IMG/VR virus record: IMGVR_UViG_3300024999_000030
Location: 268,731-332,730 of that record
DNA: 64,000 nt
Direction: 5' to 3' (one strand)
This document shows, piece by piece, positions 7,310-32,310 of the stretch. Positions within the stretch are counted from its first letter, which is position 1. Each line of letters begins with the position of its first letter. The notes beneath the pieces are model-generated. The model did not search any database and was not told the DNA's origin. It worked only from the letters and a program-made list of their open reading frames with translations. A program made the position numbers and the translations under genes.

Positions 7310-8618
7310 TACAAAAGATGAAATCAGTTTATCTAACGAAGAATTTTCTACTATAGCTAGAGGATTAGATTCTCATCACGCTGTATTTTCTACTTTGTGG
7401 AATTTAGGGAAACCAACATTCACAAACTTAACAGATACAGCAATGGTGTCTTTTGAAGACAACAATGAAAACCGTGTTAACTTTTATTTTAATCCTTCCT
7501 TTTGGAATGAGCTAACAGAATATGAAAGGAATTTTGTAATATGTCATGAATGTCTCCATGTTATTCTTGGGCATGGAGCAAGATTAAAATCTTTATTGAA
7601 TGGTAAATCTAATGCTAGTATAGCTGCGAATGCTAATATAGCTGCGGATATAGTAGTTAATCATATGCTTACTGGGTCTATGGGATTTGATAGAACTAAG
7701 TTAGTTAAACTAAATAAGAATGGATGTTGGGTCGATATAGTTTTTAAAGAAACAGATAAGATTGAAAAGGATAGGTGTCTAGAATATTATTATAACCTTC
7801 TAAATAAATTAGATGAACAAAGTGAAAAAACAACCATAGACGATCATTCTAATCTTAGTGGAACCAATATAGACGGATCAAATAATAATCTTATTGAAGA
7901 TTTAGTAGACGATGTCATCAGGGATTTAAGCCAGGATGATATGAAGTCATTCTCTGATATGGTAGGCCAAAATAAAGAAGAGTCTAATTCTCAACAGCGC
8001 GGAACTATTGCTGGTAATATTACTCAAGTTATAAAACTTACAAAAGTAATTACCAAAAAGAAATGGGAAACAGTTATTAATAAATGGGCACAAAAACAAA
8101 TTAAAGATTCTAATAAAGACCACGAACAATGGGCTAGAACCAACAGAAGATTTAATGAGATATCTTTACTTTCAAATCTATTTCTTCCATCCGAAATGGA
8201 AGTGGATGAGAGGGAACAAGAAGAAACTAAGATAAAAGTTGTATTCTTTCAGGACACCTCTGGATCTTGCCGGGGGTTTGCTAAGAGATTTTTTACTGCA
8301 GCCGCCAGTCTTCCTAAAGATAAATTTGATATAGATCTTTATTGTTTCGATACTCAAGTATATAAAACATCTTTGGAAAGCGGTAAACTTTATGGTTTTG
8401 GCGGAACGTCTTTTTCGATATTAGAAAGTTATGTTTGGAATAATATAGCTCAGCGCGATGAAAAGAAATATCCCAAAGCTATTTTTGTAATTACAGATGG
8501 ATATGGAGATAATATTAATCCGAGAATACCTAAGAAATGGTATTGGTTTTTGTCTTCGTCTTATAGAAGTTGTATATCAAATAAGTGTAATATTTTCAAA
8601 TTATCTGATTTTGAATGA
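7302..8618 (+). CDS. Metallopeptidase-vWA protein (DUF2201-type), partner of the AAA ATPase
   Basis: HExxH motif CHECLHVILGH with ANIAADIVVN, C-terminal MIDAS DTSGS, GGTSF, ITDGY. Confidence 0.85.
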   Translation: MFNTKDEISLSNEEFSTIARGLDSHHAVFSTLWNLGKPTFTNLTDTAMVSFEDNNENRVNFYFNPSFWNELTEYERNFVICHECLHVILGHGARLKSLLNGKSNASIAANANIAADIVVNHMLTGSMGFDRTKLVKLNKNGCWVDIVFKETDKIEKDRCLEYYYNLLNKLDEQSEKTTIDDHSNLSGTNIDGSNNNLIEDLVDDVIRDLSQDDMKSFSDMVGQNKEESNSQQRGTIAGNITQVIKLTKVITKKKWETVINKWAQKQIKDSNKDHEQWARTNRRFNEISLLSNLFLPSEMEVDEREQEETKIKVVFFQDTSGSCRGFAKRFFTAAASLPKDKFDIDLYCFDTQVYKTSLESGKLYGFGGTSFSILESYVWNNIAQRDEKKYPKAIFVITDGYGDNINPRIPKKWYWFLSSSYRSCISNKCNIFKLSDFE

Positions 8619-8891: not shown

Positions 8892-9064
8892 TGGTTGATA
8901 ATCATATTGACGAAGTCAAACTTAAATTTGCTAATATAAGACAGGCTATCAAAAACTTACCAATCGATGAAGAAGTTAAGGAACAGCTAAATAAAATTTT
9001 ATTTTCTCAGCTAAGGACAATCATAGCATATGTCGGATCAACCGAAGAAAAGCAAACTAGATAA
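8891..9064 (+). CDS. Small hypothetical protein (57 aa, below the ORF-track cutoff)
   Basis: TAATG overlap with the rpsU stop. MVDNHIDEVKLKFANIRQAIKNLPIDEEVKEQLNKILFSQLRTIIAYVGSTEEKQTR fills the gap. Confidence 0.6.
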   Translation: MVDNHIDEVKLKFANIRQAIKNLPIDEEVKEQLNKILFSQLRTIIAYVGSTEEKQTR

Positions 9065-9695
9065 AAAATTAGTAGACGAAATAAAAAAAGAAACAGATAT
9101 CCTCAAGCTTGTAGAAGACTTGGGGCTTAGTGTTATTAAGTCTGCGGGTGATCGATGGATTACCCATTGTTTATTTCATGACGAACGGACTCCCAGTATG
9201 ACCCTATACAGGGAGTCAAATAGTTTTTATTGTTATGGGTGCACAGAAAGTGGTGATGTAATATCTTTACTGCAAAAAGCAAAGAACCTCTCATTTATGA
9301 ATGCTGTTAAATTTTTAGCCGAGAGAGGCGGCATAGATTTAGAATTCTCTAAAAAAGCCACGTTCAATTGGGACGGATACGGCGAATACTCTGAAGAGCC
9401 CGGTACCGCGCTCGACTACGAAGACATGTTTACTTTTGTTGCCATAGAAACTCGCAAGCTCATACAGCAAATCAAACAGACTTTCACAGAAGAATCTGTG
9501 GAGTTTAGCGAGGCTATGTCTTCGATGGAGAGTATTTACCAGAAGTTTGACAACGCCGATATGATTGGTGTAAAGACGATGGCACTCTCTCAGCTTGAAG
9601 ACTTAGCAAACGAGCTAAGGGAGATATTAAATGAAAGTGGGAGTAATCGGGGACATTCACCTCGGGGCATCGTATCACTTCGGACACACTCTTAA
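9030..9695 (+). CDS. Stand-alone CHC2 zinc-finger protein (DnaG primase zinc-binding domain plus acidic helical tail)
   Basis: CLFHDERTPSM...FYCYGC...GDVISLLQ...LSFMNAVKFLA. No TOPRIM domain follows. Confidence 0.85.
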   Translation: MSDQPKKSKLDKKLVDEIKKETDILKLVEDLGLSVIKSAGDRWITHCLFHDERTPSMTLYRESNSFYCYGCTESGDVISLLQKAKNLSFMNAVKFLAERGGIDLEFSKKATFNWDGYGEYSEEPGTALDYEDMFTFVAIETRKLIQQIKQTFTEESVEFSEAMSSMESIYQKFDNADMIGVKTMALSQLEDLANELREILNESGSNRGHSPRGIVSLRTHS

Positions 9696-14441: not shown

Positions 14442-17371
14442 TGAGACTCTACAAGTATTCCGATGATAACAAAAATGTTAATGAAGAAACTAAAGATGGT
14501 CTAGAAGAATCAAAACCTCAATCTTCATCAACAATCCCAGAGATAGAGCCTGGGGAAAATGATGAAATGATTGGGATACTTGTAGAGAGTTTTGCCGATA
14601 CTCTTATATCTTCTTTATGGTCAGATGATTTTCCAATTCCACTATCGGAATTGACGCATCACATAGGACAATTAGGAGAAAATAATTTTATAAGGTCCAT
14701 GGAAAATATTAGGACCTTTTTAAGTAAAATTGGGGCTTTTAAATATGAGGTGCCAATCAACAACAAGGAAGATGCCCTCCAATATATACAATCGTTTTCC
14801 CCTCAGATTAAAGATTTAGGTAAGTCACATGCGATGGCACTGTTACAATTACTTGGTATTAGCGGAAGTAGACCAGAGGAAATCTCATTAGAAACCCCTA
14901 TTGGTAGCCCATCAGCTAAAGGCGAAGAAGGTCGTCCAACTCTAGGTGGGACACTTACAGATAAAAATACACCTCTTAGTGAGTTATTAGATAAAGAAAC
15001 CTATGTAGATAATTTATCTAGGATAAAAGATGTTTATGAAGAAATAGAAAATTTAGATCAGTTGTCACCAGAGGAAGCAGATACAAAACGCGGTCAATTA
15101 CTTACACAATTAAAATCAATTGAAAAATCTTTTTCAGCTTTTGATGTGCCAGAACAAGTAGAAAAAAAAGTAGAACAGCTGTCTATTAAATTACAATCGT
15201 CAAACGCTTTTCAAAGTAGAGTAGAAGAACTTAAGGATAAATATGGTTTAGTGGATATGAAAGATCCTAAAATTTTAGCGTATGCTGCTCAGTTAGATAG
15301 GATGCCACCGATTAAACCAGGTGAGTTTAAAGAGGGGTTTCCAGTTGTTGACTTGTCTACTATTCCAGATATAGCTAAGACTGGCGCCAGCGACATAGCA
15401 AAGTTTTTATTGATAGCTAGATTATCAGAGTCTAAAGTCTTCTTAACGAGAAATCAAAATTCTGGTAGTCCGGTTGGTGGAGGAATGGCCACAAAGTGGC
15501 CCACTACTATATCTGGAACAGATACATTTATGGACCATAGATTTTCATCTAAGAAAGCATTCGTGAATTATTCTGGAAATATTAGCTCATTAAGTTCAGA
15601 AGAGTTTAGTAAAATATTAGATAAATATTTAGGGGGGGCAGAGAAAGCCGGTTCGGGTAGACAAACTTCTTATACATGGCCCATGGTGTTTAGTCAGGCC
15701 TTAGGGTCCTTTATAGGTATGCCCGAAGAAGCTATGTTAAACCTTGGTGCAGAATTAGCAGACGCAATAGAGACTGAAGATAAATCTCAAATTAAAGCTG
15801 TGTTATCAAAATATAAATATAATTCATATGGAGTATTAACAGATACTTCTCATGACTCTTTATCTAAAAATAATTATACTTTTAGTTCTATTTGTACTCC
15901 AACTCAAATGGTAAAGTCTTTAGCGGAAGCTAAGGGAACTAATGCTGAAACAATCCATGAAGAAATGAAAGGTCTTTTACCGAATAGTAAAACGCTTCAG
16001 GGGGCTATAGGACAACCAGTATTTGATAATAGAATGCCAATCATTCCAATGCCCCCAGAGGCACTAGTGGCCATTGCTTTCTATGTTGTGAGGTTATTTA
16101 TAGCCACATGTAGAGCTAATGTAATATCAACAATAGAAGAATATAATTCTAATGAAAAAGTTCAATCAGATATAGAATCTGTTATTAATAATTTAATGGA
16201 TAATTTAAATTCATCTTTAGATTCATCTGGCGATTTTCGTTTATCTGGTGTGACTAAAGCATTTACGAGACCTATTATACAAACCACTAAGCTTCAAAAT
16301 TTTGGGGTATCGGTGGATAAACTTAAATCATTAGCAATGGAAGGTATTAAATTATCATTGCAAAGTGGAGCATTATTATCTTCATCGGAAGCCTCATTCG
16401 ATTTTAAAAAACAGTCGTCATTTAATAGAGAGGCAATTTATAATATTGCCACTACTTTATCTAAAGCCACATTAGATAGTATCCAAGTTGGGGATAAAAC
16501 CATCCCGACCAATATGACTAGTGTAACTTCTGGAACTCGTCTTACGGATTTTAGTTCCAGAAGATTATTAGATGTAGAAAAAGCCGAACAGCATGGTAGA
16601 TATTCATTATCTCAGCCCGAGCAAATTAAAGCAAGCACATCTGAAACTGTTCGTAGATCTATGGGTAGAATGTCAAGTCTTGTTGATAATTGTAATCTAG
16701 TATCTATCATTGGAGTGGAACAAAGCGAAGATGCCACTGTATTTGCCATTCGGTCTAACTCTAGTCCCGTAATACAAAATGGCGGTAAGGGAGCAAAGAT
16801 TACTATCTATACAAATACGGATGGAAAAAGAGAAGAGGTATTATCTTCCACAACTGATAGAATTTCAGTTAAACCATCAATTGGGGACGATAGTGGTAGG
16901 CTGGCATACAAGTTGTTTATATCACCAGCAGTTGATTTTTCTATGGAAGACTTTGATTATGAGCTTAGTATAGGTCAAGAAATTATGTATCAAGCTAGAT
17001 TAGCCACTGAGAAAAACACTCTTGATGTTTGGATTAGAGAAGTTAACAAAGAATTATTTAAGTTTAATGAAATGAAGTCTGAAATGATTCAAGCTATTTC
17101 TTCTAATAATTTATCAAGGGCTATGGAAGTTATGAGAATTAATGAGCTATCTTTAAGGGTGGACCTAAATAGATTTAAAACACTTAATTCAGATTACAAA
17201 TCTATTGTAGATTCTGTAATGAATAAAATTAAAGATAAAGAAGACGTAGATGCATATTCTATTTTTATAAAAGATTATGTATTTAAATGTATAGTGGCTA
17301 TTAATCAAATCAGAACTCAAATTGTTGATTTTAAAAAACAAGCAGCTATTATTCTTGGGGTGGGTAAATGA
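14441..17371 (+). CDS. Large hypothetical protein (976 aa), candidate virion/internal protein
   Basis: Long ORF coupled at both ends (TAATG, ATGA), with an acidic N-terminus after MRLYKYS. No domain recognised. Confidence 0.8.
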   Translation: MRLYKYSDDNKNVNEETKDGLEESKPQSSSTIPEIEPGENDEMIGILVESFADTLISSLWSDDFPIPLSELTHHIGQLGENNFIRSMENIRTFLSKIGAFKYEVPINNKEDALQYIQSFSPQIKDLGKSHAMALLQLLGISGSRPEEISLETPIGSPSAKGEEGRPTLGGTLTDKNTPLSELLDKETYVDNLSRIKDVYEEIENLDQLSPEEADTKRGQLLTQLKSIEKSFSAFDVPEQVEKKVEQLSIKLQSSNAFQSRVEELKDKYGLVDMKDPKILAYAAQLDRMPPIKPGEFKEGFPVVDLSTIPDIAKTGASDIAKFLLIARLSESKVFLTRNQNSGSPVGGGMATKWPTTISGTDTFMDHRFSSKKAFVNYSGNISSLSSEEFSKILDKYLGGAEKAGSGRQTSYTWPMVFSQALGSFIGMPEEAMLNLGAELADAIETEDKSQIKAVLSKYKYNSYGVLTDTSHDSLSKNNYTFSSICTPTQMVKSLAEAKGTNAETIHEEMKGLLPNSKTLQGAIGQPVFDNRMPIIPMPPEALVAIAFYVVRLFIATCRANVISTIEEYNSNEKVQSDIESVINNLMDNLNSSLDSSGDFRLSGVTKAFTRPIIQTTKLQNFGVSVDKLKSLAMEGIKLSLQSGALLSSSEASFDFKKQSSFNREAIYNIATTLSKATLDSIQVGDKTIPTNMTSVTSGTRLTDFSSRRLLDVEKAEQHGRYSLSQPEQIKASTSETVRRSMGRMSSLVDNCNLVSIIGVEQSEDATVFAIRSNSSPVIQNGGKGAKITIYTNTDGKREEVLSSTTDRISVKPSIGDDSGRLAYKLFISPAVDFSMEDFDYELSIGQEIMYQARLATEKNTLDVWIREVNKELFKFNEMKSEMIQAISSNNLSRAMEVMRINELSLRVDLNRFKTLNSDYKSIVDSVMNKIKDKEDVDAYSIFIKDYVFKCIVAINQIRTQIVDFKKQAAIILGVGK

Positions 17372-18060
17372 AAGAGTTTGCATATGTAGTTTCCAGACTC
17401 AAAACAGCCGCTCAACAAACCGGTGAAACTTGCTATATAGTTGGTGGAGCCGTGAGAGATATAATATCTCTTAAGAAGATTAAGGATGTTGATACGGTGG
17501 TGGCAATAAATCCTGAAAAATTTGCCTCAGCATTAGCCTCTACAACGGAGGGAGCAACCGCAGAAGAGGTTCATGCTCCATTTCCATTGTGGTCAGTGGA
17601 TATTAGCGACGTGTCTGTAGATGTAGTTGGGTTAAGAGGAAAGAGTCTTCAAGAAGATATTCAACATAGAAATTTTACTATCAATACAATATACTATGAC
17701 GTAGTAAGAGATAGGTTTGAAGATCCAACTGGAAAAGGGTTTACTGATCTTTATAATGGAGTAATTAATACTGTTACTCCAGATTCTTTTGTTTTTTTTA
17801 GTTCTAGTCCACATGAAATTAATAGCATATTTATAGCAATAAGATTAGTAGCGGATTCCGGATTTAAATTAAGTGAACAATTAAAAAGCGGAATTAGGAA
17901 AGCCTTAGAGCATGGCCTCATTCCCGCTGAGTTATCTAAGAGATCTAAAAAGGAAATACTAAGAACTAGGCTTTCACATAATTTTAAGACCAAAGCTCTC
18001 CCCATAATTGAAGAGCTTGGTTTGGAGCATTTTTATGAAGCTGCCGCTGTTTCTCCATAA
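17368..18060 (+). CDS. Short class II tRNA nucleotidyltransferase/poly(A) polymerase-family head domain (divergent)
   Basis: YIVGGAVRD...DVD, EDIQHRNFTIN (canonical RRDFTIN), DPTGKGFTDL. Lacks the flexible loop and a clear EDxxR. Confidence 0.8.
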   Translation: MKEFAYVVSRLKTAAQQTGETCYIVGGAVRDIISLKKIKDVDTVVAINPEKFASALASTTEGATAEEVHAPFPLWSVDISDVSVDVVGLRGKSLQEDIQHRNFTINTIYYDVVRDRFEDPTGKGFTDLYNGVINTVTPDSFVFFSSSPHEINSIFIAIRLVADSGFKLSEQLKSGIRKALEHGLIPAELSKRSKKEILRTRLSHNFKTKALPIIEELGLEHFYEAAAVSP

Positions 18061-21000
18061 AACCGCCCAGGCGGGATTAAATCAAGCTGTATTTAATATG
18101 GTAGCAGCCGCCACTGATGCAGGATTTAATGCACCAATCTATTTAGCTGGTGGTGCCGCTAGAGATATCATTCTTGGAAAGTCTCCTAATGACCTAGATG
18201 TTATGATAGAAAAAGAAAATGGAGCTGAAGAATTTGGAAAAATTTATTTAAACTATTGTGAAAAAAATAACATTAAAGTTTCTACTCCAGGTAAAGCTGT
18301 GGGTGCTAATTTTGGTGTATATAAATTTAGGCACGATGGTTTAGAATTAGATTTTGCTACTTCGCGTACCGATACTTATACTGAAGATTCTAGGAAGCCT
18401 ACAGTTGAATCTGCAAGCCTTAATGAAGATGCGGAGAGAAGAGACTTCAGTATTAATGCTATGTATGTTTGTATATACGGCACTCCCTCTGTTCAACCAG
18501 ATGACAAGGTTGATATTGGAGGAAGAGAGTTTGGAGTTTATGACCCAACTCATAAAGGAATTAAAGATTTAAAAAATGGAGTTATTAGTTTTGTAAATGA
18601 TGATCATGATTTTACTTTAAGCGAGGACCCCATTAGGGCTCTTAGGGCAGTAAAATTTTCTGGTAGAAAGTTTGGAGAAAAAACTTTTACAATTGAACCA
18701 GAGACATCTAAAAGTATTAAAGATTTTTTAAATTCAGAAAAAGGTAAAGAGCTATATCTTAAAAAGGTTAAACCGGAGAGGCCCTGGAAAGAATTAAAAG
18801 ATATTCTAACTGCTCAGAATTTAAAAGAAGCTATGAAACAGTTTAAGGAAACTGGAGTCAGGGACTTTATTTTTGATTTACCAAAAGAAGAATTTAATAG
18901 TTGGGACATGGATCAACTTAACAAACATCATAATCTTAATTTATATGATCACACAATCTTTGCTATGGAAAATCTTGGAGAAGGACTTCATACTATGGGG
19001 GAAAATGGCCTTCCCATTTCCAAAGACACTGAAGCCACTATACAACTAGCAATGTTATTACATGATGTGGGAAAAAGACATAAAGAATTTAAACCTAGAG
19101 AAGATGGAACAGTTAAATATTTAAAGCATGAAAATAAATCTACAGATGTTTTAAAAAAATATGTTTGGCCGAAGCTGGCACAGTTACCACCAAAAACTCA
19201 AGAGATTGTTAATTACTTTGTGAAGAGTCATATGGATTTTCATAAGTATCCCAAGAAGGATGAGGGAGATATTAGATTTTTAAAGCAGATGATTTATAAT
19301 CTATTGCCTAAAACTTTTGGTGGTTCTCTTGGAGCAGATAAAGAAAAACAGATGGAGATAATGTCTTATGTTGTGAGTTTCTTTGGTAGCGCAGATTCTT
19401 CTGCAAAACAATTAGAGGATGAAGAAAAAAATAAACTAACAAAAGACTACGAAGACTTTGGTAATAGACTTAGATTGTCTAAACCAAGGAACCTTTTGTT
19501 TAATGTTGCTGCTCCAATCATCAAAGAAATATTGACTAATCATGGAGTTCAAATTTATAATAGTGCAATCGGATCTATATATGAATACTTAAATGTTTAT
19601 ATTATTAACGTTTCAGAAGAACCAAAAGATATAATTCAATTTGTATCTAAGCAGACAGAACAAATTCTAACCAATGTAAAAAATTTTGTTAAAGAATTTA
19701 TAAATGAGCATGAAGGAACAAATGAACAAGAGGCGCTTGATAAATATCTTGCCAATGCTCATAAGTTTTCTGGATCAATTAAACATAGGTTTAAAAAAGA
19801 TGCAATCTTTGAAGTGTTGTCGGATTTATATAAAGATAAAAAAATAAATGGAGATGTAAAAATGCCTAAGCTCGTTATTGCTAAATATAAATCTAAAAAG
19901 AAACTCGATACCGGTACAGTTGTATATGAGTATGGAGAAGCCGATAAAAAGAAACGAGCTAAAAAAAAGGCACGTCAAGTGAGAAAGGTGTTTCAAAATA
20001 TTAATAAAATTAAAAAATCTTTTGAAAAAGATCTAAAGTCCGATGATAAAAAAATACAAATGACGGCTTTAGCTGTGGGAATTATTTATCATATTTATGA
20101 GCGGGTAGGCGATAGAGCTAATGTAGGAACAGGCGTTACTTCATTTAGAAAGAAACATATTACAGTAAAAGGAAATAAAGTACAGTTTAAATATGTGGGA
20201 AAATCACATATGAAACAAGATAAAACATTAACAGATTCAACTATAGCCAAAATCATTAAGGAGAATTTAGAAGGTAAAAGTAGTAATGCATATCTGTTTG
20301 ACTATACAGATGAAAATGGTAAAAAATTTGATGTATATTCCAGTGACATTAATGAATATCTTAAATCTTTTAACATTACCGCTAAAGATTTAAGGGCCCA
20401 CGCAGCTAATGATATTTTAATTGCTAAACTTAAATCAGCTGGAAAAGCTAAAGGTGAATCTCCAGAAGAAAAAGAAAAATGGCGTAAAGAAAAACTCAAA
20501 GAATTAATTGAAGAAACAGCTGATGAAATTGGTCATACTCCCGGCATTTGCAAATCATCATATATAGACCCATCTCTTATGGATGAATATATAGCCAGTG
20601 GTAAAATTATTAAATTAGCTGCTGATTTTGATTTGACAGTAATAATTAAACTTGCGGATATTTCTGTTAATCCAAAGATTAAAGAGTTAATGGATAGAGA
20701 ATTCACACCAGAAGAACAATCAATCATTTCAAATCCACATGATGTAAGATCTACAATTAATGATGAAGTGTTCTTACAGGCCTTAAGTAAAGCTAAACAA
20801 CAAGGAACTTTATCTGGTTTATTAGAAATAGTAGAAGATAATGACCCTTCTGCTTTTGGAGTTACCCCGGTTATAGTTGGTGGTAAAGCTATTCCCATTA
20901 TTGGGCTCAATGTTAATAAAATTAAAGAAGAGGCAGCCCAGAAAGGTAAATCGATTGAAGAGGTGTTGTCAGAACAGGTTAAACAATTTTTAGGAGTCAT

Positions 21001-21565
21001 GGCCCATGAGAAAGAACATGTCGAAGGCAAAGGTGAACCTGAAGCTGAAAGAGTACAAAAAGATGAAGTGTCTAAACAAACTTCTCAAGAAGGGTCATCA
21101 TCTAAGCTAACAATGGGCTCTCTTAAGTTGGCATCTACAGATAAATCTCTTTTTCAAAAACTTGGTATTAGAGATATTAGTAATGATACCTTATTAAAAG
21201 TATCCAATAATGTTTTAAAAATTCTTGGAATCCCAAATACCAATCTTAATATAGGACTATTGTCTCTTGGGTATCTTGTTATGCTTGGTAATCACCCCTA
21301 TAGGTCAGAATGGAATATTAGACAAGCTACGGGTTTATCTGAACCAATTAATATTAAGGAAGCACAGACCCTATATAATATTTTAGATAACGCAATAGAT
21401 GAGAAACCTATTGAAGAAGATAAGGCAAAAGAATATTATTCTTTTTCCGATGAAGATAAAATGAATCTAGGTGAACTACAATCACTTAAGTGGGAATCTG
21501 AACCATCCTATGCGGCTGGAACAGGTATGGGATTTTATCCTCAAACACATCCTTTTAATTACTAA
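18035..21565 (+). CDS. Multidomain protein: CCA-adding tRNA nucleotidyltransferase + HD domain + type IB topoisomerase + HExxH segment
   Basis: LAGGAARD...DLD, DFATSRTDTY...SRKP, EDAERRDFSINA, EDPIRALRAVKF; HD domain DHT...LLHDVGK...HE; Topo IB motifs ERVG, VGKS, AKDLR, GHTPGICKSSYIDP; AHEKEH. A GGAG RBS favours the start at 18035. Confidence 0.9.
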   Translation: MKLPLFLHKTAQAGLNQAVFNMVAAATDAGFNAPIYLAGGAARDIILGKSPNDLDVMIEKENGAEEFGKIYLNYCEKNNIKVSTPGKAVGANFGVYKFRHDGLELDFATSRTDTYTEDSRKPTVESASLNEDAERRDFSINAMYVCIYGTPSVQPDDKVDIGGREFGVYDPTHKGIKDLKNGVISFVNDDHDFTLSEDPIRALRAVKFSGRKFGEKTFTIEPETSKSIKDFLNSEKGKELYLKKVKPERPWKELKDILTAQNLKEAMKQFKETGVRDFIFDLPKEEFNSWDMDQLNKHHNLNLYDHTIFAMENLGEGLHTMGENGLPISKDTEATIQLAMLLHDVGKRHKEFKPREDGTVKYLKHENKSTDVLKKYVWPKLAQLPPKTQEIVNYFVKSHMDFHKYPKKDEGDIRFLKQMIYNLLPKTFGGSLGADKEKQMEIMSYVVSFFGSADSSAKQLEDEEKNKLTKDYEDFGNRLRLSKPRNLLFNVAAPIIKEILTNHGVQIYNSAIGSIYEYLNVYIINVSEEPKDIIQFVSKQTEQILTNVKNFVKEFINEHEGTNEQEALDKYLANAHKFSGSIKHRFKKDAIFEVLSDLYKDKKINGDVKMPKLVIAKYKSKKKLDTGTVVYEYGEADKKKRAKKKARQVRKVFQNINKIKKSFEKDLKSDDKKIQMTALAVGIIYHIYERVGDRANVGTGVTSFRKKHITVKGNKVQFKYVGKSHMKQDKTLTDSTIAKIIKENLEGKSSNAYLFDYTDENGKKFDVYSSDINEYLKSFNITAKDLRAHAANDILIAKLKSAGKAKGESPEEKEKWRKEKLKELIEETADEIGHTPGICKSSYIDPSLMDEYIASGKIIKLAADFDLTVIIKLADISVNPKIKELMDREFTPEEQSIISNPHDVRSTINDEVFLQALSKAKQQGTLSGLLEIVEDNDPSAFGVTPVIVGGKAIPIIGLNVNKIKEEAAQKGKSIEEVLSEQVKQFLGVMAHEKEHVEGKGEPEAERVQKDEVSKQTSQEGSSSKLTMGSLKLASTDKSLFQKLGIRDISNDTLLKVSNNVLKILGIPNTNLNIGLLSLGYLVMLGNHPYRSEWNIRQATGLSEPINIKEAQTLYNILDNAIDEKPIEEDKAKEYYSFSDEDKMNLGELQSLKWESEPSYAAGTGMGFYPQTHPFNY

Positions 21566-22364: not shown

Positions 22365-23648
22365 ATGAATGTAATGCACCACGCTATGGCTCAGCCCCAT
22401 AAGGTAATTGTAGTAATGGACGACAAGGAAGTTAAGACAGCCATCCATGATTTTTGGGCAGTTAATGGGGCCACTCTAATGAAAGACACCCCTGGCTCAT
22501 GGACCAAAGCTACTGCCTTGAGGGAATATTTGGAAAAACAAAAGGGCAGTAAATTATATTGGGACATGATGTGGGAGTGGATTAGTGATGGTATTAAGAA
22601 AGTACCATTGAAGGTTTATAGAATTTCATCTGTTAGTGTGGACAAATGGGACGAAAAGACTGGAGCAATTCTTTCTGTTGTTGTCGACATAATTCCCAAA
22701 GTAAAACTTGGAGACTATAAAAATATTAAGTTACAGATGCCATCATTTAAAGCCCAACCCAAAGAGGTTGAAGGACAAATCCTGTTAGCGCTTAATCATT
22801 CACCGTTAGCTACTACCGAACAACTTCATAAGGTAATTGAAGCTGGAGACACAGTAGAGATGTCTTACTCTTTAACTAGAGTGGACAACAATGAAGTGCT
22901 TCAAACTAATGTTCGTGATATGGTCCATCTTAGTTCAGGCGCATATGCACCACAATTTGTTTCCGCTATTATTGGGGAGTCTGCTCCAGATAAATTCAAT
23001 AAAACTATTATTTTTCCTGAAGACTATATTCACGAATCTTTACGTGGAGTAGAGGTTAATCTTCAAGTAGAGACCACTGGAGTAATAAAACGTACACTAC
23101 CCACTGAGGAAGCTGAAGCAGTTAGAGAGGGGATGTCGCTGGAAGATTGGCGAGCTAGGTTTGTTATGGAGATTGAAAAAAATAAAAAAGAGACATTTGA
23201 AATTAAAAAAAGAGATTTTATTAGAGCAGAAGCAGAAAAAATTCTGTTAGCTACTTCTGAAATAGATCCAATTCCAGATAGTATGGTAGAGTCAGAAGCG
23301 GAGGCCCTTATGCAAAATCTAGCTAAATCTAAAAATATGACAGTAGATGAATATGCAGCAGAGATGAAGGTGAGTAAAGAATCTTTGTTTGCGGAGCTAG
23401 CATATCTAGCTGTAAGGCGACTTATGGTTAGGTTTGTTGTGGATGCTATCTGTGAAATGGAAGATTTTAAAGCAGATGAAAATAAGACTGAAGAATTTTT
23501 AATTAAATATGCAGCCGAAGCTGGCGAATCAGTAGAAAAAATAAAGACAGATGTTGGAGAAAAAGATATTTCTTTCTTAGTTAAATCTTATATGGTAGAT
23601 GAATTTATTAATCAACATGTGGTTCTAGTGGAACCATCAGTTAGTTGA
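22365..23648 (+). CDS. tig: Trigger factor-like chaperone (divergent)
   Basis: About 427 aa three-domain layout: PKVKLGDYKNIK, FKBP-like IEAGDTVEMSY...APQFVSAIIG...FPEDY...LRG, and C-domain IPDSMVESE...AVRRLMVRFVVDAI. The GFRxG ribosome-binding signature is not recognisable. Confidence 0.82.
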   Translation: MNVMHHAMAQPHKVIVVMDDKEVKTAIHDFWAVNGATLMKDTPGSWTKATALREYLEKQKGSKLYWDMMWEWISDGIKKVPLKVYRISSVSVDKWDEKTGAILSVVVDIIPKVKLGDYKNIKLQMPSFKAQPKEVEGQILLALNHSPLATTEQLHKVIEAGDTVEMSYSLTRVDNNEVLQTNVRDMVHLSSGAYAPQFVSAIIGESAPDKFNKTIIFPEDYIHESLRGVEVNLQVETTGVIKRTLPTEEAEAVREGMSLEDWRARFVMEIEKNKKETFEIKKRDFIRAEAEKILLATSEIDPIPDSMVESEAEALMQNLAKSKNMTVDEYAAEMKVSKESLFAELAYLAVRRLMVRFVVDAICEMEDFKADENKTEEFLIKYAAEAGESVEKIKTDVGEKDISFLVKSYMVDEFINQHVVLVEPSVS

Positions 23649-23710: not shown

Positions 23711-24610
23711 ATGTTTGCAAACTTACATACTCATACCGATTATTCTGTATTAGATGGAATGATGACGGTAGATAAGGCTTTTGAAAAAGCCAAGCAGAAT
23801 GGATACTCCGCTCTAGCAATTACAGAACACGCAAATATGGCGTCTTTATTTGTTGCTTTAAAGGCGGCTGAAAAATATGATGTAAAATTTATTCCTGGTA
23901 TAGAATTTAATTTTGCAGATGACACGGGCGACGAGAAGGAATATCATCTCGTCGCTTTAGCTTCAACCCACAATGGACTTAAGTCTATTATGAAAGTTTC
24001 CTATGGGGCTTATTTTAAAGACTATAAGAATCCATATATCACATGGCAAGATCTAGATGAACTAGATAAAGATGGGGTATATCTTTTATCTGGATGTGAG
24101 GCAGGACTATTAGCAAGAAAAGCTTTATTTTTTGGCTCTTCTCGCGGAGGCCAAGTGTTAGATAGATTTTCATCTATGTTTGGTGATAGGTTCTTTGTTG
24201 AATTAAATGCCCCTTACAATGATAGGCAAAAAGATATCAATAGTATTTTATTAGATTTATCTAAACAAAAAAGTGTTCCAGCAATTATGACATTAGATAG
24301 TCATTATGCTAATGAAGCTGATGCGGAATTATTTCCAGTTTTTCAAGCAGTTCAATCTAAACGCACTATCTTTGATAAAGATAAATTTTACGATAGAAGT
24401 TCTTTAATCTCTGAGTCAGCGTTAAGAAATATGTGCGAGTCAGAATTTTCTTCCTCTATAGATAACGCCGCCGTATTAGCTTCTAGATGTCAGGACCCTA
24501 GGGAATATTTAAAAATTAGTGGCTCCTTTCTTATGCCAAAATTTGATGTGAGTTCAACGGACGACTATGAAGGATTTAAGAAGTGGAGGAAGGAAAACTA
24601 TGGAGTATAA
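23711..24610 (+). CDS. dnaE: DNA polymerase III alpha, N-terminal PHP domain (separate gene)
   Basis: FANLHTHTDYSVLDG, ALAITEH, FIPGIE, YHLVALA, LLSGC, DSHY, ending at the LMPKF linker. Confidence 0.9.
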   Translation: MFANLHTHTDYSVLDGMMTVDKAFEKAKQNGYSALAITEHANMASLFVALKAAEKYDVKFIPGIEFNFADDTGDEKEYHLVALASTHNGLKSIMKVSYGAYFKDYKNPYITWQDLDELDKDGVYLLSGCEAGLLARKALFFGSSRGGQVLDRFSSMFGDRFFVELNAPYNDRQKDINSILLDLSKQKSVPAIMTLDSHYANEADAELFPVFQAVQSKRTIFDKDKFYDRSSLISESALRNMCESEFSSSIDNAAVLASRCQDPREYLKISGSFLMPKFDVSSTDDYEGFKKWRKENYGV

Positions 24611-27122
24611 TGAAAGTCATGAATATTTGACTTATCTATGTGTGAAGGGTTGGGATAAAAAACTAGTTCCCTTAAACTTATCTGAAAATAAAAACATAGA
24701 ATATGCACAAAGACTTAAGCATGAATTACAAATGATTAATATGGCTAACTTAGATGATTATTTTTTAATTGTTTATGATATCATGAGATATTGTGATGAA
24801 CAAGGAATTCAAAGGGGACCCGGGAGAGGGAGTTCAGGAGGATGTTTAGTCGCATATCTAACCAATATTACTCATGTAGATAGTATAAAATATGAATGTT
24901 TGTTTTCTAGGTTCTTTAATATTGGTAGACTTCAAACGGGAAATCTTGCAGATATCGATGTGGATATTGATCCTAGATATATTAATGATGTAATTGGATA
25001 TATTAAAAATAAATATGGAGCAGATAAAGTCGCTGCCATTTCCACTGTTGTAAAGCTATTTGGTAAGTCTGCAATTAAAGATGTGTCCAGAGCGCTGGCA
25101 ATTGGAGAAAACGGAACAGGTAAAGCCGAAAACAAGAAAGAGATATTCTCTTTAAGTAATCGTATTACTTCTTTCTTTCCTGATGATCCTAAAGCTACGG
25201 TGGCATCATCCGTATCAACATCCAGTGAGCTTAAGAAATATCAAGAACAGTTTCCAGAACTTTTCGATAAAGCTATTAAATTGGAGGGATTGGTTCGCTC
25301 CAACTCTATTCATGCATGTGGGATGACTATTTCTAGTGTACCCTTAATTGAACATCTACCTATGAAACTTTGTAAAATTAAAGGCGATGAAGATTCAGAG
25401 GAAGAAGATAATAGTTATGGTCAACAGGTACAACTCCGAGAAGTTGTAGACGTGGACATGAAGGTATTAGAGTCTAGGAAATTTTTGAAGTTTGACTTTC
25501 TTAAATTAAAAACTTTGTCCGTGGTTAGAGACACCTTAGATATGATTAAACAAAATCATGACGTTGATATAAAGCTTCAAGATATTAACCTTGAAGATGA
25601 AAAAGTATATGAATATATGTGGAAGGCTCCTAATTTATTAGGTATTTTCCAGTTTGAAAGCTCTGGAATGAGAGATTTAGTCAGAGCAGTAAAACCTAGA
25701 AGTATTGAAGAGTTGGCGCACTGTAATGCTTTATATCGCCCAGGCCCAATCGATTCTGGTATATTAGCTCAGTATATTAAAAGACGACAGGGCAGAGAGA
25801 TGATAGCATATGATCACGTAGCTCTTAAACCTATATTAGAAAATACATATGGGCTACCGGTGTTTCAAGAGCAAAATATGAAGATTGCTCAAACTATCGC
25901 GGGCTTTTCAGAACAAGAAGCTGACATTTTAAGAGCAGCTATGGGTAAAAAAGATAAAGATAAAATGGCCTCTCTTCAATCTAAATTTTTAGATGGGGCT
26001 GCATCCAAGGGATATAATAGGGACTTAGCGGAATATCTATTTGATGCTATTGAAAAATCCAGTAGATATGCATTTAATAAACCACACTCTGTGGCATATT
26101 CTATTATGGCTTATTATACCCTATGGCTTAAATTTTATTATCCTACTGAATTTATTACTGCCAGTATTAATAATGAAAAAGATTGGGAAAAGATTTCTTT
26201 ATTTGTTTTTGACGCACAAGAACATAATATTAAAGTTCTTCCAGTGGATGTATCTAAATCTCAAATTGAATACACCGTTGCAGGTGATAAACAAATTCTT
26301 ACAGGCTTTAAATCTATTAAGGGAGTGGGGGCAATAGCTCCTCAGATTATCGTCGCCCGTGCCCCATACGTAGATTTTGTTGATTTTTTAATTAGAACCC
26401 ATGAGAAGGGTTCTAAGGTAAGCAGTGCAGTTGTTGATGCAGCTAATGCGGTAGGTGGATTTGAGTCTTTAGGTTTAAACAGGGCTACAGTAGAAGCTCA
26501 TTATGATAAAGTAGCAAGCCTACTTAGGGTTGAATATTTAACTAAGGAAAATAAAATTACGGAGATGGTGACAAAATACACTAAAGGCAATGAAACTATT
26601 GATATAGTGAAAGTTGTACAAGAATTAATTTCTAATTCCCCCACAGTTAGTTATGAGTTCGATAAGAGGCAAATGAGATATATTACTAAGGCTCTTTCCG
26701 CTGTATATCCAGAGAAGAAAGATACTGTGTCTGGAGTCCCTATCGAAGACCTACCAGATTGGCCTATGCTCAAAAAATGTAAACTTGAAAAAGCATACCT
26801 TGGATATTTTGTAAGTGGCCACCCCACTAAAGACGTTGCTATAAAACCCAAGAATCACCTTGGCTATGTGAGTAGTATGAATAACGGCGATAAAGTTGAA
26901 ATCGTTGTTTTTATAGAAAGATTAGTAGTAGATAAAATTGTGTCTGGTGGCAAAAGAATGTGTAAGTTTGAAATTTCAGACGCCAGTGGCTCTACAGACT
27001 TAGCGGTGTTTATGAAATCTCATGAGATGTGTCCGATTATAGTTGGGTCAGTATGTCATCTTTTATGTGCGGTCAACGTATTTAACGGCAGAACCTCACT
27101 ACAGTTTGTAAAGGTTTTATAG
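24600..27122 (+). CDS. dnaE: DNA polymerase III alpha catalytic part (palm/thumb/fingers/HhH/OB)
   Basis: GPGRGSSGGCLVAY, LADIDVDID, HACG, KFDFLKLKTL, GIFQFES, ALYRPGP, YAFNKPHS, LGYFVSGHP. GGAGG RBS before ATG 24600. Confidence 0.93.
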   Translation: MEYNESHEYLTYLCVKGWDKKLVPLNLSENKNIEYAQRLKHELQMINMANLDDYFLIVYDIMRYCDEQGIQRGPGRGSSGGCLVAYLTNITHVDSIKYECLFSRFFNIGRLQTGNLADIDVDIDPRYINDVIGYIKNKYGADKVAAISTVVKLFGKSAIKDVSRALAIGENGTGKAENKKEIFSLSNRITSFFPDDPKATVASSVSTSSELKKYQEQFPELFDKAIKLEGLVRSNSIHACGMTISSVPLIEHLPMKLCKIKGDEDSEEEDNSYGQQVQLREVVDVDMKVLESRKFLKFDFLKLKTLSVVRDTLDMIKQNHDVDIKLQDINLEDEKVYEYMWKAPNLLGIFQFESSGMRDLVRAVKPRSIEELAHCNALYRPGPIDSGILAQYIKRRQGREMIAYDHVALKPILENTYGLPVFQEQNMKIAQTIAGFSEQEADILRAAMGKKDKDKMASLQSKFLDGAASKGYNRDLAEYLFDAIEKSSRYAFNKPHSVAYSIMAYYTLWLKFYYPTEFITASINNEKDWEKISLFVFDAQEHNIKVLPVDVSKSQIEYTVAGDKQILTGFKSIKGVGAIAPQIIVARAPYVDFVDFLIRTHEKGSKVSSAVVDAANAVGGFESLGLNRATVEAHYDKVASLLRVEYLTKENKITEMVTKYTKGNETIDIVKVVQELISNSPTVSYEFDKRQMRYITKALSAVYPEKKDTVSGVPIEDLPDWPMLKKCKLEKAYLGYFVSGHPTKDVAIKPKNHLGYVSSMNNGDKVEIVVFIERLVVDKIVSGGKRMCKFEISDASGSTDLAVFMKSHEMCPIIVGSVCHLLCAVNVFNGRTSLQFVKVL

Positions 27123-31142: not shown

Positions 31143-31568
31143 ATGTTAACTACTTGTAATAAGTGCGGCTCACAAAAAGAAGTAAGGCTTAGAAAAAGTG
31201 ACAATAAACCAGTGTGTATTGAATGTGGAGCAGAAGTGCCCCTCTCCAATATTATGATTGAAAATATGAAGAGGACTAACGATTATATTACCGCTTCAGA
31301 TAATAAAGTACCATTTGGATGTAAGTGTGATAAGTGCGGAGCTATTGCTGAACTTATTTTTAACTCAACAACTAATAAAGCTGAGTGTACCATTTGCCAT
31401 AAGACCATGGACATTACACCGTTTATGATTAAAGCACTTCAGATTTCTGGTCATTATAATCCATCTAAAGATTCAGTGGTTTCTCTCGAAGAGAAAGAAG
31501 AGGTTAAAAAGAATGTGCCTGGACCCAATAAGCAAACTCGTGGAGCTGTGTCACGCAAATCTAAGTAA
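31143..31568 (+). CDS. Duplicated zinc-ribbon protein
   Basis: Two similar CxxC...CxxC modules (CNKC/CIEC and CDKC/CTIC). AGGAGG RBS. Confidence 0.75.
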   Translation: MLTTCNKCGSQKEVRLRKSDNKPVCIECGAEVPLSNIMIENMKRTNDYITASDNKVPFGCKCDKCGAIAELIFNSTTNKAECTICHKTMDITPFMIKALQISGHYNPSKDSVVSLEEKEEVKKNVPGPNKQTRGAVSRKSK

Positions 31569-32310
31569 CCTTCATAGAGATTATTTTATGAGACGTGGGT
31601 ATAGTTCTGACGCTATGGATTCTTTTAGTGTCGGAACTTTTCCCTTAGATTTAATTGTTGCCTCATTAAACTGTAATCAGTTAATTAATCTTAAGATTTT
31701 ATACGCACCTAAGCCAGGTTCCACATTATATTATTCGGAGTTCAGGGATAGAATTATTATTCCAGTACATGATGCATATGGTAAGGTAGTGGGTATTACT
31801 GGGAGATTGTTAACAGAGGATCCAAATAGAGGTAAATATTACAACAGCGATTACCCAAAGGTATCTACATTATTTAATTTACATAGAGCTAAAAATGAAA
31901 TTATAAAATCTGGATATGCCGTAGTAGTAGAGGGTAATTTAGATGTGGTGGCTATGTGGGATGCCGGAATTAAAAATGTTGTGGCCTGTACTGGGGCATT
32001 TATTACTCCAAAGCAAGTTCGTAAGTTACTTAGGTATACCGATAAAGTTTTAGTGGCAACTGATAACGATAATGCAGGTCACGCTTCTTATACTAAGTTT
32101 CTTAAAAATTCAGCGTATTATATTGAAAACAAATCGCTTAGCTCTATTAGAATTATTCCTCCATTCGGCTTAAAAGATCCAGATGATTTTATTAAAAAAT
32201 ATGGAGCTAACACATGTCGGGAGTGGGTTGCCGCAGGCGCCCGGCATCTCACATGCAACGATGGCAACGATACTACTAGCTTCAAAGGAGTGTGGAATGT
32301 CTGTAAATAA
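31513..32310 (+). CDS. dnaG: DnaG-type primase catalytic/TOPRIM domain lacking the zinc-binding domain
   Basis: FRDRIIIPV, GITGR, KYYNS, LFNL, VVVEGNLDV, ACTG, ATDNDNAG, KDPDDFI. Confidence 0.9.
   Translation: MCLDPISKLVELCHANLSNLHRDYFMRRGYSSDAMDSFSVGTFPLDLIVASLNCNQLINLKILYAPKPGSTLYYSEFRDRIIIPVHDAYGKVVGITGRLLTEDPNRGKYYNSDYPKVSTLFNLHRAKNEIIKSGYAVVVEGNLDVVAMWDAGIKNVVACTGAFITPKQVRKLLRYTDKVLVATDNDNAGHASYTKFLKNSAYYIENKSLSSIRIIPPFGLKDPDDFIKKYGANTCREWVAAGARHLTCNDGNDTTSFKGVWNVCK

What the first reader, a model, noticed from the sequence alone, without database searches (positions are those of the whole stretch)
18035..21565. CCA-adding enzyme-HD-topoisomerase IB polyprotein with cleavage-like sites between modules
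Seen: one frame carries an intact class II tRNA nucleotidyltransferase (DxD, RRD, EDxxR), an HD domain, and a Topo IB core with all catalytic positions (ERVG, GKS, DLR, GHT, SYIDP; Tyr at 20561). It also has an HExxH segment (21005-21019). K-x-A sites end the 11-aa leader (18067), fall just after the topoisomerase (20620, 20656) and fall after the HExxH segment (21133). An in-frame GGAG...ATG at 19850/19862 sits exactly at the topoisomerase start (MPKLVIA|KYK). Established: CCA enzymes with HD domains repair tRNA 3' ends, and Topo IB relaxes DNA without ATP. I do not know of these two being fused. Inference: a virion-loaded polyprotein, cut into a tRNA-repair enzyme and a topoisomerase that act straight after injection.
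Basis: partly seen in the sequence, partly recalled or inferred. Interest (0 to 1): 0.87.

Follow-up and report, generated by a model that had tools for sequence, protein, structure and literature searches.

The report
Phage tRNA-repair enzyme fused to topoisomerase
An uncultured large phage encodes one real 1176-residue protein that joins a tRNA CCA-adding/HD enzyme to a minimal type IB topoisomerase; this pairing recurs in dozens of giant phage multi-domain proteins, but nothing supports the proposed cutting sites.

Summary
The ORF (18035-21565, +) is real, uninterrupted and identical in three other assemblies. Domain mapping confirms a class II tRNA nucleotidyltransferase with an HD-like region (res ~22-470). 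A unique helical linker follows (471-609), then a type IB topoisomerase with all five catalytic residues (610-865), then a conserved 310-residue tail with HExxH.

The fusion is lineage-specific. The closest relatives encode topoisomerase+tail as a separate 564-aa protein starting exactly at M610, behind the same GGAG-N8-ATG; one of them keeps a decayed 5' stub of the CCA gene. More distant relatives fuse the upstream short nucleotidyltransferase directly to the topoisomerase. The topoisomerase is therefore probably made both fused and alone.

The pairing is not unique. At least 33 of the best 150 cluster representatives combine this minimal TopoIB with a class II nucleotidyltransferase. Many are 1400-3400 aa and also carry RNA-end-healing domains (2H, HAD_SAK_1, LigD phosphoesterase) or polyvalent-protein domains (LPD1, ART-PolyVal).

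K-x-A sites occur at chance frequency and are not conserved. The fold around HExxH is unresolved. The gene sits in the replication/repair module, not among head genes. "Cleaved virion polyprotein" is unsupported here, although two giant relatives lie directly after terminase and portal.

The parts
17368..18060 (+). Upstream gene for a short (230 aa) class II nucleotidyltransferase with head and neck only. It has HRN in place of motif B (RRD) and no EDxxR. In distant relatives it is the partner fused directly to the topoisomerase.
   Evidence: Pfam PolyA_pol E 1e-17. PHROG 2244. Orthologous to the N-termini of P0002, P0009 and P0010, E 1e-40 to 1e-46.
18035..21565 (+). Whole fused ORF, 1176 codons plus stop, about 133 kDa. 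The start overlaps the last 26 nt of the upstream gene in another frame, with GGAG 8 nt upstream.
   Evidence: Identical in L006, L013 and L014.
18137..18874 (+). Nucleotidyltransferase head (res 35-184) and RNA-binding neck (res 218-280), with motifs A (GGAARD...DLD), B (RRD) and D (EDPIR).
   Evidence: Pfam. PHROG 2244 covers res 35-422, E 7e-45. PDB 3h37, 1vfg and 4wbz. Motif positions.
18998..19246 (+). HD-like region (YDH at about res 304-306, LHDVGK at 342).
   Evidence: Pfam HD E 0.022, below cut-off. NCBIfam multifunctional CCA model aligned over res 35-408. Stand-alone homologues all have PolyA_pol-RNAbd-HD.
19445..19861 (+). 139-residue helical linker with no detectable relatives. 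It is absent from the closest relatives and kept open in frame.
19838..19844 (+). A7 homopolymer 18 nt before the topoisomerase ATG. One A fewer would give GAT AAA AAA TAA, that is two separate genes.
   Evidence: Read from the sequence. The same A7 is in L013 and L014, and L006 has no difference from the window in this region.
19850..19864 (+). GGAGATGTAAAAATG: Shine-Dalgarno, 8-nt spacer and the topoisomerase's own start codon (M610). It is conserved where the sequence is intergenic in relatives.
   Evidence: P0008 and P0158 start exactly here.
19862..20629 (+). Minimal type IB topoisomerase: an N-terminal beta-hairpin (LVIAKYK...VVYEY) plus the full catalytic domain. Catalytic residues are R in ERVG, K in GKSH, R in DLR, H in GHT and Y843 (20561-20563).
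   Evidence: Pfam E 1e-21. PDB sequence match 2f4q residues 88-304. AlphaFold pLDDT 70-92 and Foldseek 2f4q E 8e-11.
20630..21562 (+). C-terminal extension found only in this phage group. It has HEKEH at 21005-21019, a conserved PYRxEWNxR block (21296-21322) and a conserved terminal KWExxPS...PQxHPxNY motif (21488-21562).
   Evidence: Conserved in 5 of 5 relatives. No Pfam, PHROG, NCBIfam or PDB sequence hit. Model pLDDT 47.

Best explanation
This is a genuine single gene in an uncultured large phage (a contig of 333 kb exists). It is a lineage-specific translational fusion, not a polyprotein with cleavage sites.

How it arose. A complete class II tRNA nucleotidyltransferase with an HD-like region lies between a short nucleotidyltransferase gene and the topoisomerase IB gene. 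It has no stop codon, so translation from 18035 runs through a 139-residue linker into the topoisomerase and its conserved tail, giving a product of about 133 kDa. The topoisomerase keeps its own ribosome-binding site and ATG at 19862, so a 63-kDa topoisomerase+tail protein is probably also made by internal initiation (inferred).

What it does. The protein is a small member of a large, largely unannotated set of phage multi-domain proteins. In that set, a minimal TopoIB (last hairpin of the N-domain plus the catalytic domain) is repeatedly joined to class II nucleotidyltransferases and to RNA or DNA 3'-end-healing domains. The most likely roles are inferred from the families:
- The nucleotidyltransferase/HD half restores damaged tRNA 3' ends.
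- The TopoIB half carries out ATP-independent strand cleavage and rejoining on the phage's own DNA during replication and recombination, which fits its place in the replication/repair gene block.

The repeated, independent fusions suggest the two activities are used together on nucleic-acid ends.
For: Shown:
- ORF integrity and coding constraint; the same sequence in other assemblies.
- Domain and catalytic-residue mapping.
- Relatives L002 and L007-L012 have topoisomerase+tail as a separate 564-aa gene starting at M610 behind the same GGAGAYGTAAAAATG.
- L002 retains about 170 nt of the CCA gene's 5' end as a frameshifted stub. The CCA gene was therefore ancestral to this clade and later lost.
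- L001 and L003 fuse the short nucleotidyltransferase directly to the topoisomerase.
- At least 33 of the top 150 representatives carry both domains. Both orders occur, for example P0019 as Topo-CCA-HD.
- Co-occurring domains in two censuses of these proteins (21 that also carry the nucleotidyltransferase, 39 with the topoisomerase only): 2H in 5 of 21 and 3 of 39 proteins, HAD_SAK_1 in 1 and 5, and single cases of RNA ligase, LigD 3'-phosphoesterase, LigD PrimPol and PTP-SAK.
- The catalytic R, K, R, H and Y positions are invariant or at least 90% conserved across 39 family members.
- The window's CCA-HD groups with TopoIB-linked CCA-HD modules rather than with cellular enzymes (SH-aLRT 93, long branch).
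- The gene block is replication/repair and is syntenic in relatives.
Against: - No expression or protein data, so internal initiation is inferred only. A GGAG-ATG pair deep inside an ORF occurs about 8 times in 19,900 codons, and the Met is absent in L001 and L003.
- The fusion differs from two separate genes by one base in an A7 run.
- NCBIfam scores for the CCA part are far below the equivalog cut-offs (111 bits against 439). CCA-, A- or poly(A)-adding specificity is therefore open.
- HD is below the Pfam cut-off.
- The TopoIB lacks most of the N-terminal DNA-clamping domain.
- No tRNA genes were found in the window.
- The function of the tail and its HExxH is unknown.
Confidence: 0.55

Rival explanations
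1. The protein is a virion-packaged polyprotein that is cut, at K-x-A sites or by its own HExxH module, into a tRNA-repair enzyme and a topoisomerase. Both then act right after DNA injection.
For: - Giant homologues combining TopoIB and the nucleotidyltransferase are encoded immediately after terminase and portal on two unrelated contigs.
- Some homologues carry LPD1 and ART-PolyVal domains.
- HExxH is conserved in 5 of 5 tails.
- Polyvalent proteins often carry zincin peptidases that are predicted to autoprocess (PMC5512222).
- From memory: poxviruses package their TopoIB in the virion.
Against: - K-x-A occurs at chance frequency (11 against 8.9 +/- 2.6) and is not conserved.
- No peptidase family match; the tail model has pLDDT 47, and the best fold match is a YbeY-family protein at E 0.17.
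- In this phage and all its syntenic relatives the gene lies in the replication/repair block, about 34 kb upstream of terminase and portal.
- The module border is already explained by a gene start.
Confidence: 0.1
2. Coupled end-repair. The TopoIB domain works on RNA or on ribonucleotide-bearing ends rather than as a DNA-relaxing enzyme. One option is sealing or creating 2',3'-cyclic phosphate/5'-OH breaks without ATP. The nucleotidyltransferase, HD, 2H or phosphatase modules on the same chain would then heal or extend those ends.
For: - The recognisable partners of this TopoIB clade are mostly RNA or 3'-end-healing domains: PolyA_pol, 2H, HAD_SAK_1, PTP-SAK, LigD_N, tRNA_lig_CPD and HD. Only 1 of 21 giant proteins has an RNA ligase.
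- Fusion to class II nucleotidyltransferases arose repeatedly and in both orders.
- Type IB enzymes make 2',3'-cyclic phosphate at ribonucleotides, and yeast Top1 can reverse such nicks (PMC12143597).
- The DNA-clamping N-domain is reduced to one hairpin.
Against: - All evidence is guilt by association.
- Most of each giant protein is unannotated. Other partners (GNAT, PAP2, ART, LPD1) are unrelated to RNA repair.
- Residues matching the DNA-contacting Tyr pair of poxvirus TopoIB (VYEY) are invariant.
- The local context is DNA replication.
- Healing domains such as CPDases would destroy the cyclic phosphate that sealing needs.
Confidence: 0.2
3. The fusion is incidental or artefactual. The two enzymes really act as separate proteins. 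Either the true sequence has a stop in the A-run, or read-through is a recent neutral accident and only the internally initiated topoisomerase and a non-essential CCA enzyme matter.
For: - One base in A7 separates the fused state from the split state.
- The closest relatives have lost the CCA module altogether and keep a stand-alone topoisomerase.
- SD+ATG is preserved.
Against: - The same A7 and the same fused frame are present in L013 and L014, and the near-identical L006 has no difference from the window in this region.
- The 139-codon linker is kept open.
- Nucleotidyltransferase-TopoIB fusions are common elsewhere.
Confidence: 0.12

Closest known systems
Bacterial and poxvirus type IB topoisomerases (D. 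radiodurans TopIB 2f4q/3m4a; variola/vaccinia TopIB 2h7f, 1a41)
   Same: Same catalytic-domain fold (Foldseek E 8e-11 to 1e-9). Same five catalytic residues. Same Y-x-Y hairpin before the catalytic domain.
   Different: About 25% identity. Only the last hairpin of the N-terminal clamp domain is kept. It carries a 310-residue tail with HExxH and sits within a multi-domain chain.
Class II CCA-adding enzymes with an HD domain (E. coli-type multifunctional Cca; ~470-aa PolyA_pol-RNAbd-HD proteins)
   Same: Head, neck and HD order; motifs A, B and D.
   Different: 27-33% identity to any stand-alone enzyme. Below all equivalog cut-offs. Extra 139-residue linker and C-terminal fusion.
Polyvalent proteins of phages and conjugative elements (Iyer et al. 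2017, PMC5512222) and 'Swiss Army Knife' RNA-repair proteins (Pfam HAD_SAK_1, PTP-SAK)
   Same: Several unrelated nucleic-acid enzymes on one phage polypeptide. Relatives carry LPD1, ART-PolyVal, HAD_SAK_1, 2H and zincins, and two sit after the portal.
   Different: That paper's text names no topoisomerase IB domain; its only 'topoisomerase' hit is a reference title. The window's protein has no LPD or PolyVal hallmark domain and lies in the replication block.
Stand-alone TopoIB of jumbo phages (phiRSL1, Lu11, PaBG; PMC7824862)
   Same: A phage-encoded tyrosine-recombinase-fold topoisomerase I in large phages.
   Different: Those are described as single-function replication enzymes; no fusion to RNA-repair modules is reported. 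No INPHARED phage has the fusion.

Membership tests
Class II tRNA nucleotidyltransferase (PolyA_pol head, PF01743) | Head domain above Pfam threshold, with motif A G-G-x-x-R-D ... D-x-D | tested here: met
   74.9 bits against a cut-off of 23. GGAARD at residue 39 and DLD at residue 53.
Class II tRNA nucleotidyltransferase (PolyA_pol head, PF01743) | Motif B (RRD) and the nucleotide-selecting motif D (EDxxR) | tested here: met
   RRD at 135 and EDPIR at 197. Aligned to T. maritima 3h37.
Class II tRNA nucleotidyltransferase (PolyA_pol head, PF01743) | Equivalog-level match to a curated CCA-adding model | tested here: not met
   The best is TIGR02692 at 111 bits against a cut-off of 438.8. All ten models are below their cut-offs.
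Class II tRNA nucleotidyltransferase (PolyA_pol head, PF01743) | Adds C-C-A (rather than A only, CC only or poly(A)) to tRNA | not testable with these tools
   Needs an enzyme assay.
HD phosphohydrolase domain | Pfam HD above threshold, with the H...HD...D metal ligands | tested here: inconclusive
   15.5 bits against a cut-off of 22. YDH and LHD are present. Homologues with the same layout score significantly for HD.
Type IB topoisomerase | Catalytic-core family match and fold | tested here: met
   PF01028 at 77.8 bits against a cut-off of 23.7. PDB 2f4q E 1.6e-17. Foldseek E 8e-11 on a confident model.
Type IB topoisomerase | Catalytic pentad Arg-Lys-Arg-His/Asn-Tyr | tested here: met
   ERVG, GKSH, DLR, GHT and SYI align to the DraTopIB catalytic positions. 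Conserved across family members.
Type IB topoisomerase | N-terminal domain that completes the clamp round duplex DNA | tested here: not met
   The match starts at DraTopIB residue 88 and variola residue 66. Only one beta-hairpin precedes the catalytic domain.
Type IB topoisomerase | Relaxes supercoiled DNA through a 3'-phosphotyrosyl intermediate | not testable with these tools
   Needs a relaxation and covalent-complex assay.
Zincin-like metallopeptidase (including MPTase of polyvalent proteins) | HExxH on a helix, conserved among relatives | tested here: met
   HE..H is invariant in 5 of 5 tails. The motif lies at the end of a predicted helix.
Zincin-like metallopeptidase (including MPTase of polyvalent proteins) | Zincin fold with a third metal ligand; family-level match | tested here: inconclusive
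   No Pfam, PHROG or PDB sequence hit. Model pLDDT 47. The best fold hits are YbeY-family proteins at E 0.17-6 and BlaR1 at E 3.
Polyvalent protein (Iyer et al. 2017) | Two or more unrelated effector or enzyme domains on one phage polypeptide | tested here: met
   Nucleotidyltransferase, HD-like, TopoIB and HExxH tail.
Polyvalent protein (Iyer et al. 2017) | Hallmark associated domains (LPDs, MPTase-PolyVal, ART-PolyVal, etc.) | tested here: not met
   None in the window's protein. Present in some homologues.
Polyvalent protein (Iyer et al. 2017) | Encoded with head/packaging or DNA-transfer genes and delivered with the DNA | tested here: not met
   Here it lies in the replication block. Location is met for L004 and L005. 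Delivery itself cannot be tested here.
Proteolytically processed viral polyprotein | Conserved cleavage motif at module borders, above chance | tested here: not met
   K-x-A is seen 11 times against 8.9 +/- 2.6 expected. Not conserved in relatives.

The most novel reading that the evidence does not exclude
The minimal TopoIB that forms the hub of these phage multi-domain proteins is not, or not only, a DNA-relaxing enzyme. It would be an ATP-independent transesterase for RNA or ribonucleotide-bearing ends. It would seal or remodel the 2',3'-cyclic phosphate/5'-OH breaks that host anticodon nucleases and other RNases make, working with the nucleotidyltransferase, HD, 2H or phosphatase modules fused to it. 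In the giant relatives it would be delivered from the capsid. That would be a new class of RNA-repair enzyme and a new counter-defence route.
Probability: 0.15. Interest if true: 0.9.

Novelty: new variant of a known kind. Interest (0 to 1): 0.6.

Why it matters
Type IB topoisomerases in phages have been treated as stand-alone replication helpers. CCA-adding enzymes in phages have been treated as tRNA-repair accessories.

This survey shows that one distinct, minimal TopoIB clade is repeatedly fused to class II nucleotidyltransferases and to 3'-end-healing domains. The fusions range from an 800-residue protein to chains of 3400 residues, and they arose independently and in both orders. I found no description of this association in the literature I could search.

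That gives a concrete, testable link between strand-transferase chemistry and nucleic-acid end repair in phage-host conflict. The window's protein, with its natural unfused and differently fused relatives, is a small and tractable entry point for biochemistry.

Tried and rejected
1. Nucleotide and protein searches of 50,697 deposited phage genomes found no close relative and no fusion. Only separate CCA hits and one TopoIB hit came back.
2. Tail (res 866-1176): nothing from Pfam, PHROGs, NCBIfam or a PDB profile search. Two AlphaFold runs gave low confidence for the tail, so Foldseek hits to YbeY/zincins (E at least 0.17) are only a hint.
3. The linker (res 430-612) searched against all collected homologues gave nothing below E 0.09. 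Apparent extensions of some alignments into it are artefacts.
4. K-x-A as a cleavage signal is rejected.
5. Assembly artefact is rejected as the main reading, on four concordant assemblies.
6. Programmed frameshift at the A7 run: considered. The fused frame is the zero frame and no canonical slippery heptamer fits, so it was not pursued.
7. No tRNA genes or Rfam families in the window, so no local link to phage tRNAs.
8. The promoter scan found a TTGACT-18-TATAAT site at 19532-19561, but the total count is at chance level.
9. The giant 3988-aa ORF and the other window proteins share nothing with the TopoIB-containing proteins except the short nucleotidyltransferase.
10. Burroughs and Aravind 2016 (PMC5062991) could not be read, so I cannot exclude that it mentions TopoIB.

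Full report
OBSERVATION

The window is a densely coded, single-strand phage region. The finding's frame is open from ATG 18035 (GGAG 8 nt upstream) to the stop at 21563-21565, giving 1176 codons.

Family and structure matches:
- Pfam: PolyA_pol head (res 35-184, E 9e-21), PolyA_pol_RNAbd (218-280, E 2e-5) and Topoisom_I (638-841, E 1e-21).
- Pfam HD scores only 15.5 bits against a cut-off of 22.
- PHROG 2244 'tRNA nucleotidyltransferase' spans res 35-422.
- The topoisomerase part aligns to D. radiodurans TopIB residues 88-304 (E 1.6e-17) and to variola TopIB, with Arg, Lys, Arg, His and Tyr843 at the catalytic positions.
- Its AlphaFold model is confident (pLDDT 70-92) and finds 2f4q/3m4a and the poxvirus enzymes by Foldseek (E 8e-11 to 1e-9).
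- Only the last hairpin of the N-terminal clamp domain is present.
- The CCA half matches class II enzymes (3h37, 1vfg, 4wbz) but stays far below every NCBIfam equivalog cut-off. Its nearest stand-alone relatives are ~470-aa PolyA_pol-RNAbd-HD proteins at 27-33% identity.

IS THE FUSION REAL?

The 139-codon stretch between the HD region and the topoisomerase has no relatives. It is nevertheless stop-free, while the other two frames have 8 and 24 stops; chance is about 1e-6.

An A7 run at 19838-19844 means one base fewer would create TAA 13 nt before the topoisomerase ATG. Three further assemblies carry the same sequence:
- L006 (ENA): 99.96% identical, differing only by a SNP at 23007 and a 3-nt indel at 24761-24763.
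- IMG/VR contigs of 112 kb (L013) and 333 kb (L014), from two metagenomes.

I accept the fused ORF as real. Reads were not available.

HOW THE FUSION AROSE

- The best hit in 1.84 billion representatives is a 564-aa protein (P0008, 72% identity). It aligns to residues 610-1176 starting at its own residue 1.
- Its contig L002 aligns to window 16956-18202 and 19837-21565. It therefore lacks the body of the CCA gene but keeps about 170 nt of its 5' end as a frameshifted stub.
- A sister group (P0158, nine contigs) has the short nucleotidyltransferase, a 51-nt spacer and then the 564-aa topoisomerase+tail.
- In all three lineages the topoisomerase ATG is preceded by GGAGAYGTAAAA.
- More distant syntenic relatives (L001, L003; about 44% identity) fuse the short nucleotidyltransferase directly to topoisomerase+tail, giving 807 and 816 aa. 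That nucleotidyltransferase is the orthologue of window ORF 17368-18060, not of the CCA module.

So the CCA-HD gene was present in the ancestor of the window/L002/L007 clade and was later lost in two lineages. In the window it reads without a stop into a topoisomerase gene that still has its own start. About a third of the window's genes use GGAG at this spacing (15 of 46). Deep internal GGAG-ATG pairs are rare, about 8 in 19,900 codons. Internal initiation is therefore likely, but it is inferred.

THE WIDER FAMILY

About 330 representatives match at E<1e-30, nearly all through the topoisomerase module at roughly 40% identity. Two thirds of the top 150 are 700-3400 aa. At least 33 of the top 150 also contain a class II nucleotidyltransferase.

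Pfam censuses of these proteins found, besides Topoisom_I:
- RNA and 3'-end-healing domains: 2H/LigT-type phosphoesterases, HAD_SAK_1, PTP-SAK, LigD 3'-phosphoesterase, LigD PrimPol, RNA ligase (one case) and HD.
- Others: LPD1, ART-PolyVal, GNAT, PAP2 and zincins.

Complete CCA-HD modules occur with the topoisomerase in several architectures:
- P0019: Topo-CCA-HD (the reverse order)
- P0015: Topo-CCA-HD-PrimPol
- P0017: Topo-CCA-HD-2H-LigD_N
- P0133: Topo-ART-CCA-HD

In a quick tree the window's CCA-HD groups with P0159, P0015 and P0017 rather than with cellular enzymes (SH-aLRT 93, but on a long branch). On two unrelated contigs (311 kb and 81 kb) the giant protein is encoded directly after terminase and portal.

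The polyvalent-protein paper does not list TopoIB among its domains. Searches for 'topoisomerase IB' together with tRNA nucleotidyltransferase, RNA repair or phage virion found nothing relevant. Stand-alone TopoIB in some jumbo phages is known.

CLEAVAGE AND PROTEASE CLAIMS

K-x-A occurs 11 times against 8.9 +/- 2.6 in shuffles. HExxH is invariant in five tails, as are a PYRxEWNxR block and the terminal KWExxPS...PQxHPxNY motif.

The tail has no family or PDB sequence match. Its models are poor (pLDDT 47). The only recurrent fold hints are YbeY-type metal hydrolases and BlaR1 at non-significant E-values. A zincin-like metal site is possible; a processing protease is not shown.

CONTEXT

Genes from 2 kb to 33 kb:
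- a sigma-like factor and PIN-PhoH
- the DnaG zinc ribbon, SbcD, SbcC and a PD-(D/E)XK exonuclease
- a 976-aa unknown protein, the short nucleotidyltransferase and the fusion
- a trigger-factor homologue, PHP and DnaE as separate genes, RecA and the DnaG core

Terminase and portal are at 55.8-60.6 kb, after a 3988-aa ORF with no family match. The block around the fusion is syntenic in all relatives. This favours a replication/repair role here rather than capsid cargo.

MECHANISM

Shown: the domain identities, the intact catalytic residues, the conserved internal start and the recurrent fusions.

Inferred: the N-terminal half repairs tRNA (or other RNA) 3' ends. The topoisomerase half cleaves and rejoins strands without ATP, by default on phage DNA during replication and recombination. 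Both a fused and an unfused topoisomerase are made.

The repeated linkage to end-healing enzymes keeps a more novel reading open. Type IB enzymes make 2',3'-cyclic phosphates at ribonucleotides, and yeast Top1 can reverse such nicks (PMC12143597). This clade might therefore act on RNA or ribonucleotide-bearing ends. I give that about 0.15-0.2.

VERDICT

The polyprotein and virion-cargo interpretation is not supported for this gene. The fusion is a new variant within known kinds (multi-domain phage repair or polyvalent proteins), and the wider association appears undescribed. Interest 0.6.

Noticed in passing
relatives P0003, P0004, P0036, P0062, P0090, P0110 and others; window 19871-19891: A short motif of the form [KR][VI]A[AS][KR][WYF][LK] ('RVAARYL') occurs 99 times in 157 homologues, against 1.1 in shuffles. 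It sits just before the TopoIB module, often again right after it, at other module borders and at the extreme N- or C-termini. The window has one degenerate copy (LVIAKYK), modelled as the first strand of the N-terminal hairpin. It could be a structural strand, a docking motif or a processing site.
   Followed up: partly
window 17368-18060: A second, short class II nucleotidyltransferase directly upstream (230 aa). It has no tRNA-binding body, HRN in place of RRD and no EDxxR. The phage thus has two tandem nucleotidyltransferases, and relatives fuse this one to TopoIB. Its substrate is unknown.
   Followed up: partly
window 43867-55833: A 3988-aa ORF immediately upstream of the large terminase with no Pfam hit. 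It has no similarity to the TopoIB-containing giant proteins.
   Followed up: partly
window 22365-23648: A phage-encoded trigger-factor homologue (Trigger_N and Trigger_C; TIGR00115 E 2e-37, below cut-off). It is conserved at the same position in all syntenic relatives.
   Followed up: partly
window 23711-24610 and 24567-27122: DNA polymerase III alpha is split into a PHP-domain gene and a polymerase-core gene that overlap by 44 nt. Relatives L001 and L007 show the same split, so it is a real feature rather than an error.
   Followed up: partly
window 9030-9695 and 31513-32310: DnaG primase appears split into a zinc-ribbon gene and a catalytic-core/Toprim gene about 22 kb apart.
   Followed up: no
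window 57832-60648; L004 5345-9586: The portal protein is unusually long (938 aa) and has an internal stretch matching PHROG 85. The related jumbo contig's portal is 1413 aa with a LAGLIDADG hint, possibly an intein or insertion.
   Followed up: no
window 21488-21562: The last ~25 residues of the tail are predicted disordered. They carry an invariant KWExxPS...PQxHPxNY end in all five relatives, which looks like a short docking motif.
   Followed up: no
window 20606-20659: IIKLA(A)D occurs twice, 12 residues apart, just after the topoisomerase. It is present in the close relatives, while L001 and L003 keep only the first copy.
   Followed up: partly
window 19532-19561: A near-consensus sigma-70-like site (TTGACT-18-TATAAT, 11 of 12) lies inside the linker, about 300 nt upstream of the topoisomerase ATG. 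The overall count of such sites is at chance level.
   Followed up: no
window 23007 and 24761-24763: The only differences from the independent assembly L006 over 10.2 kb are one SNP and a 3-nt (TTT) indel in the polymerase gene. This is population-level variation in the same phage.
   Followed up: yes
window 3099-4352 and 7302-8618: A PIN-PhoH fusion protein and a DUF2201_N putative metallopeptidase are encoded upstream of the replication block.
   Followed up: no
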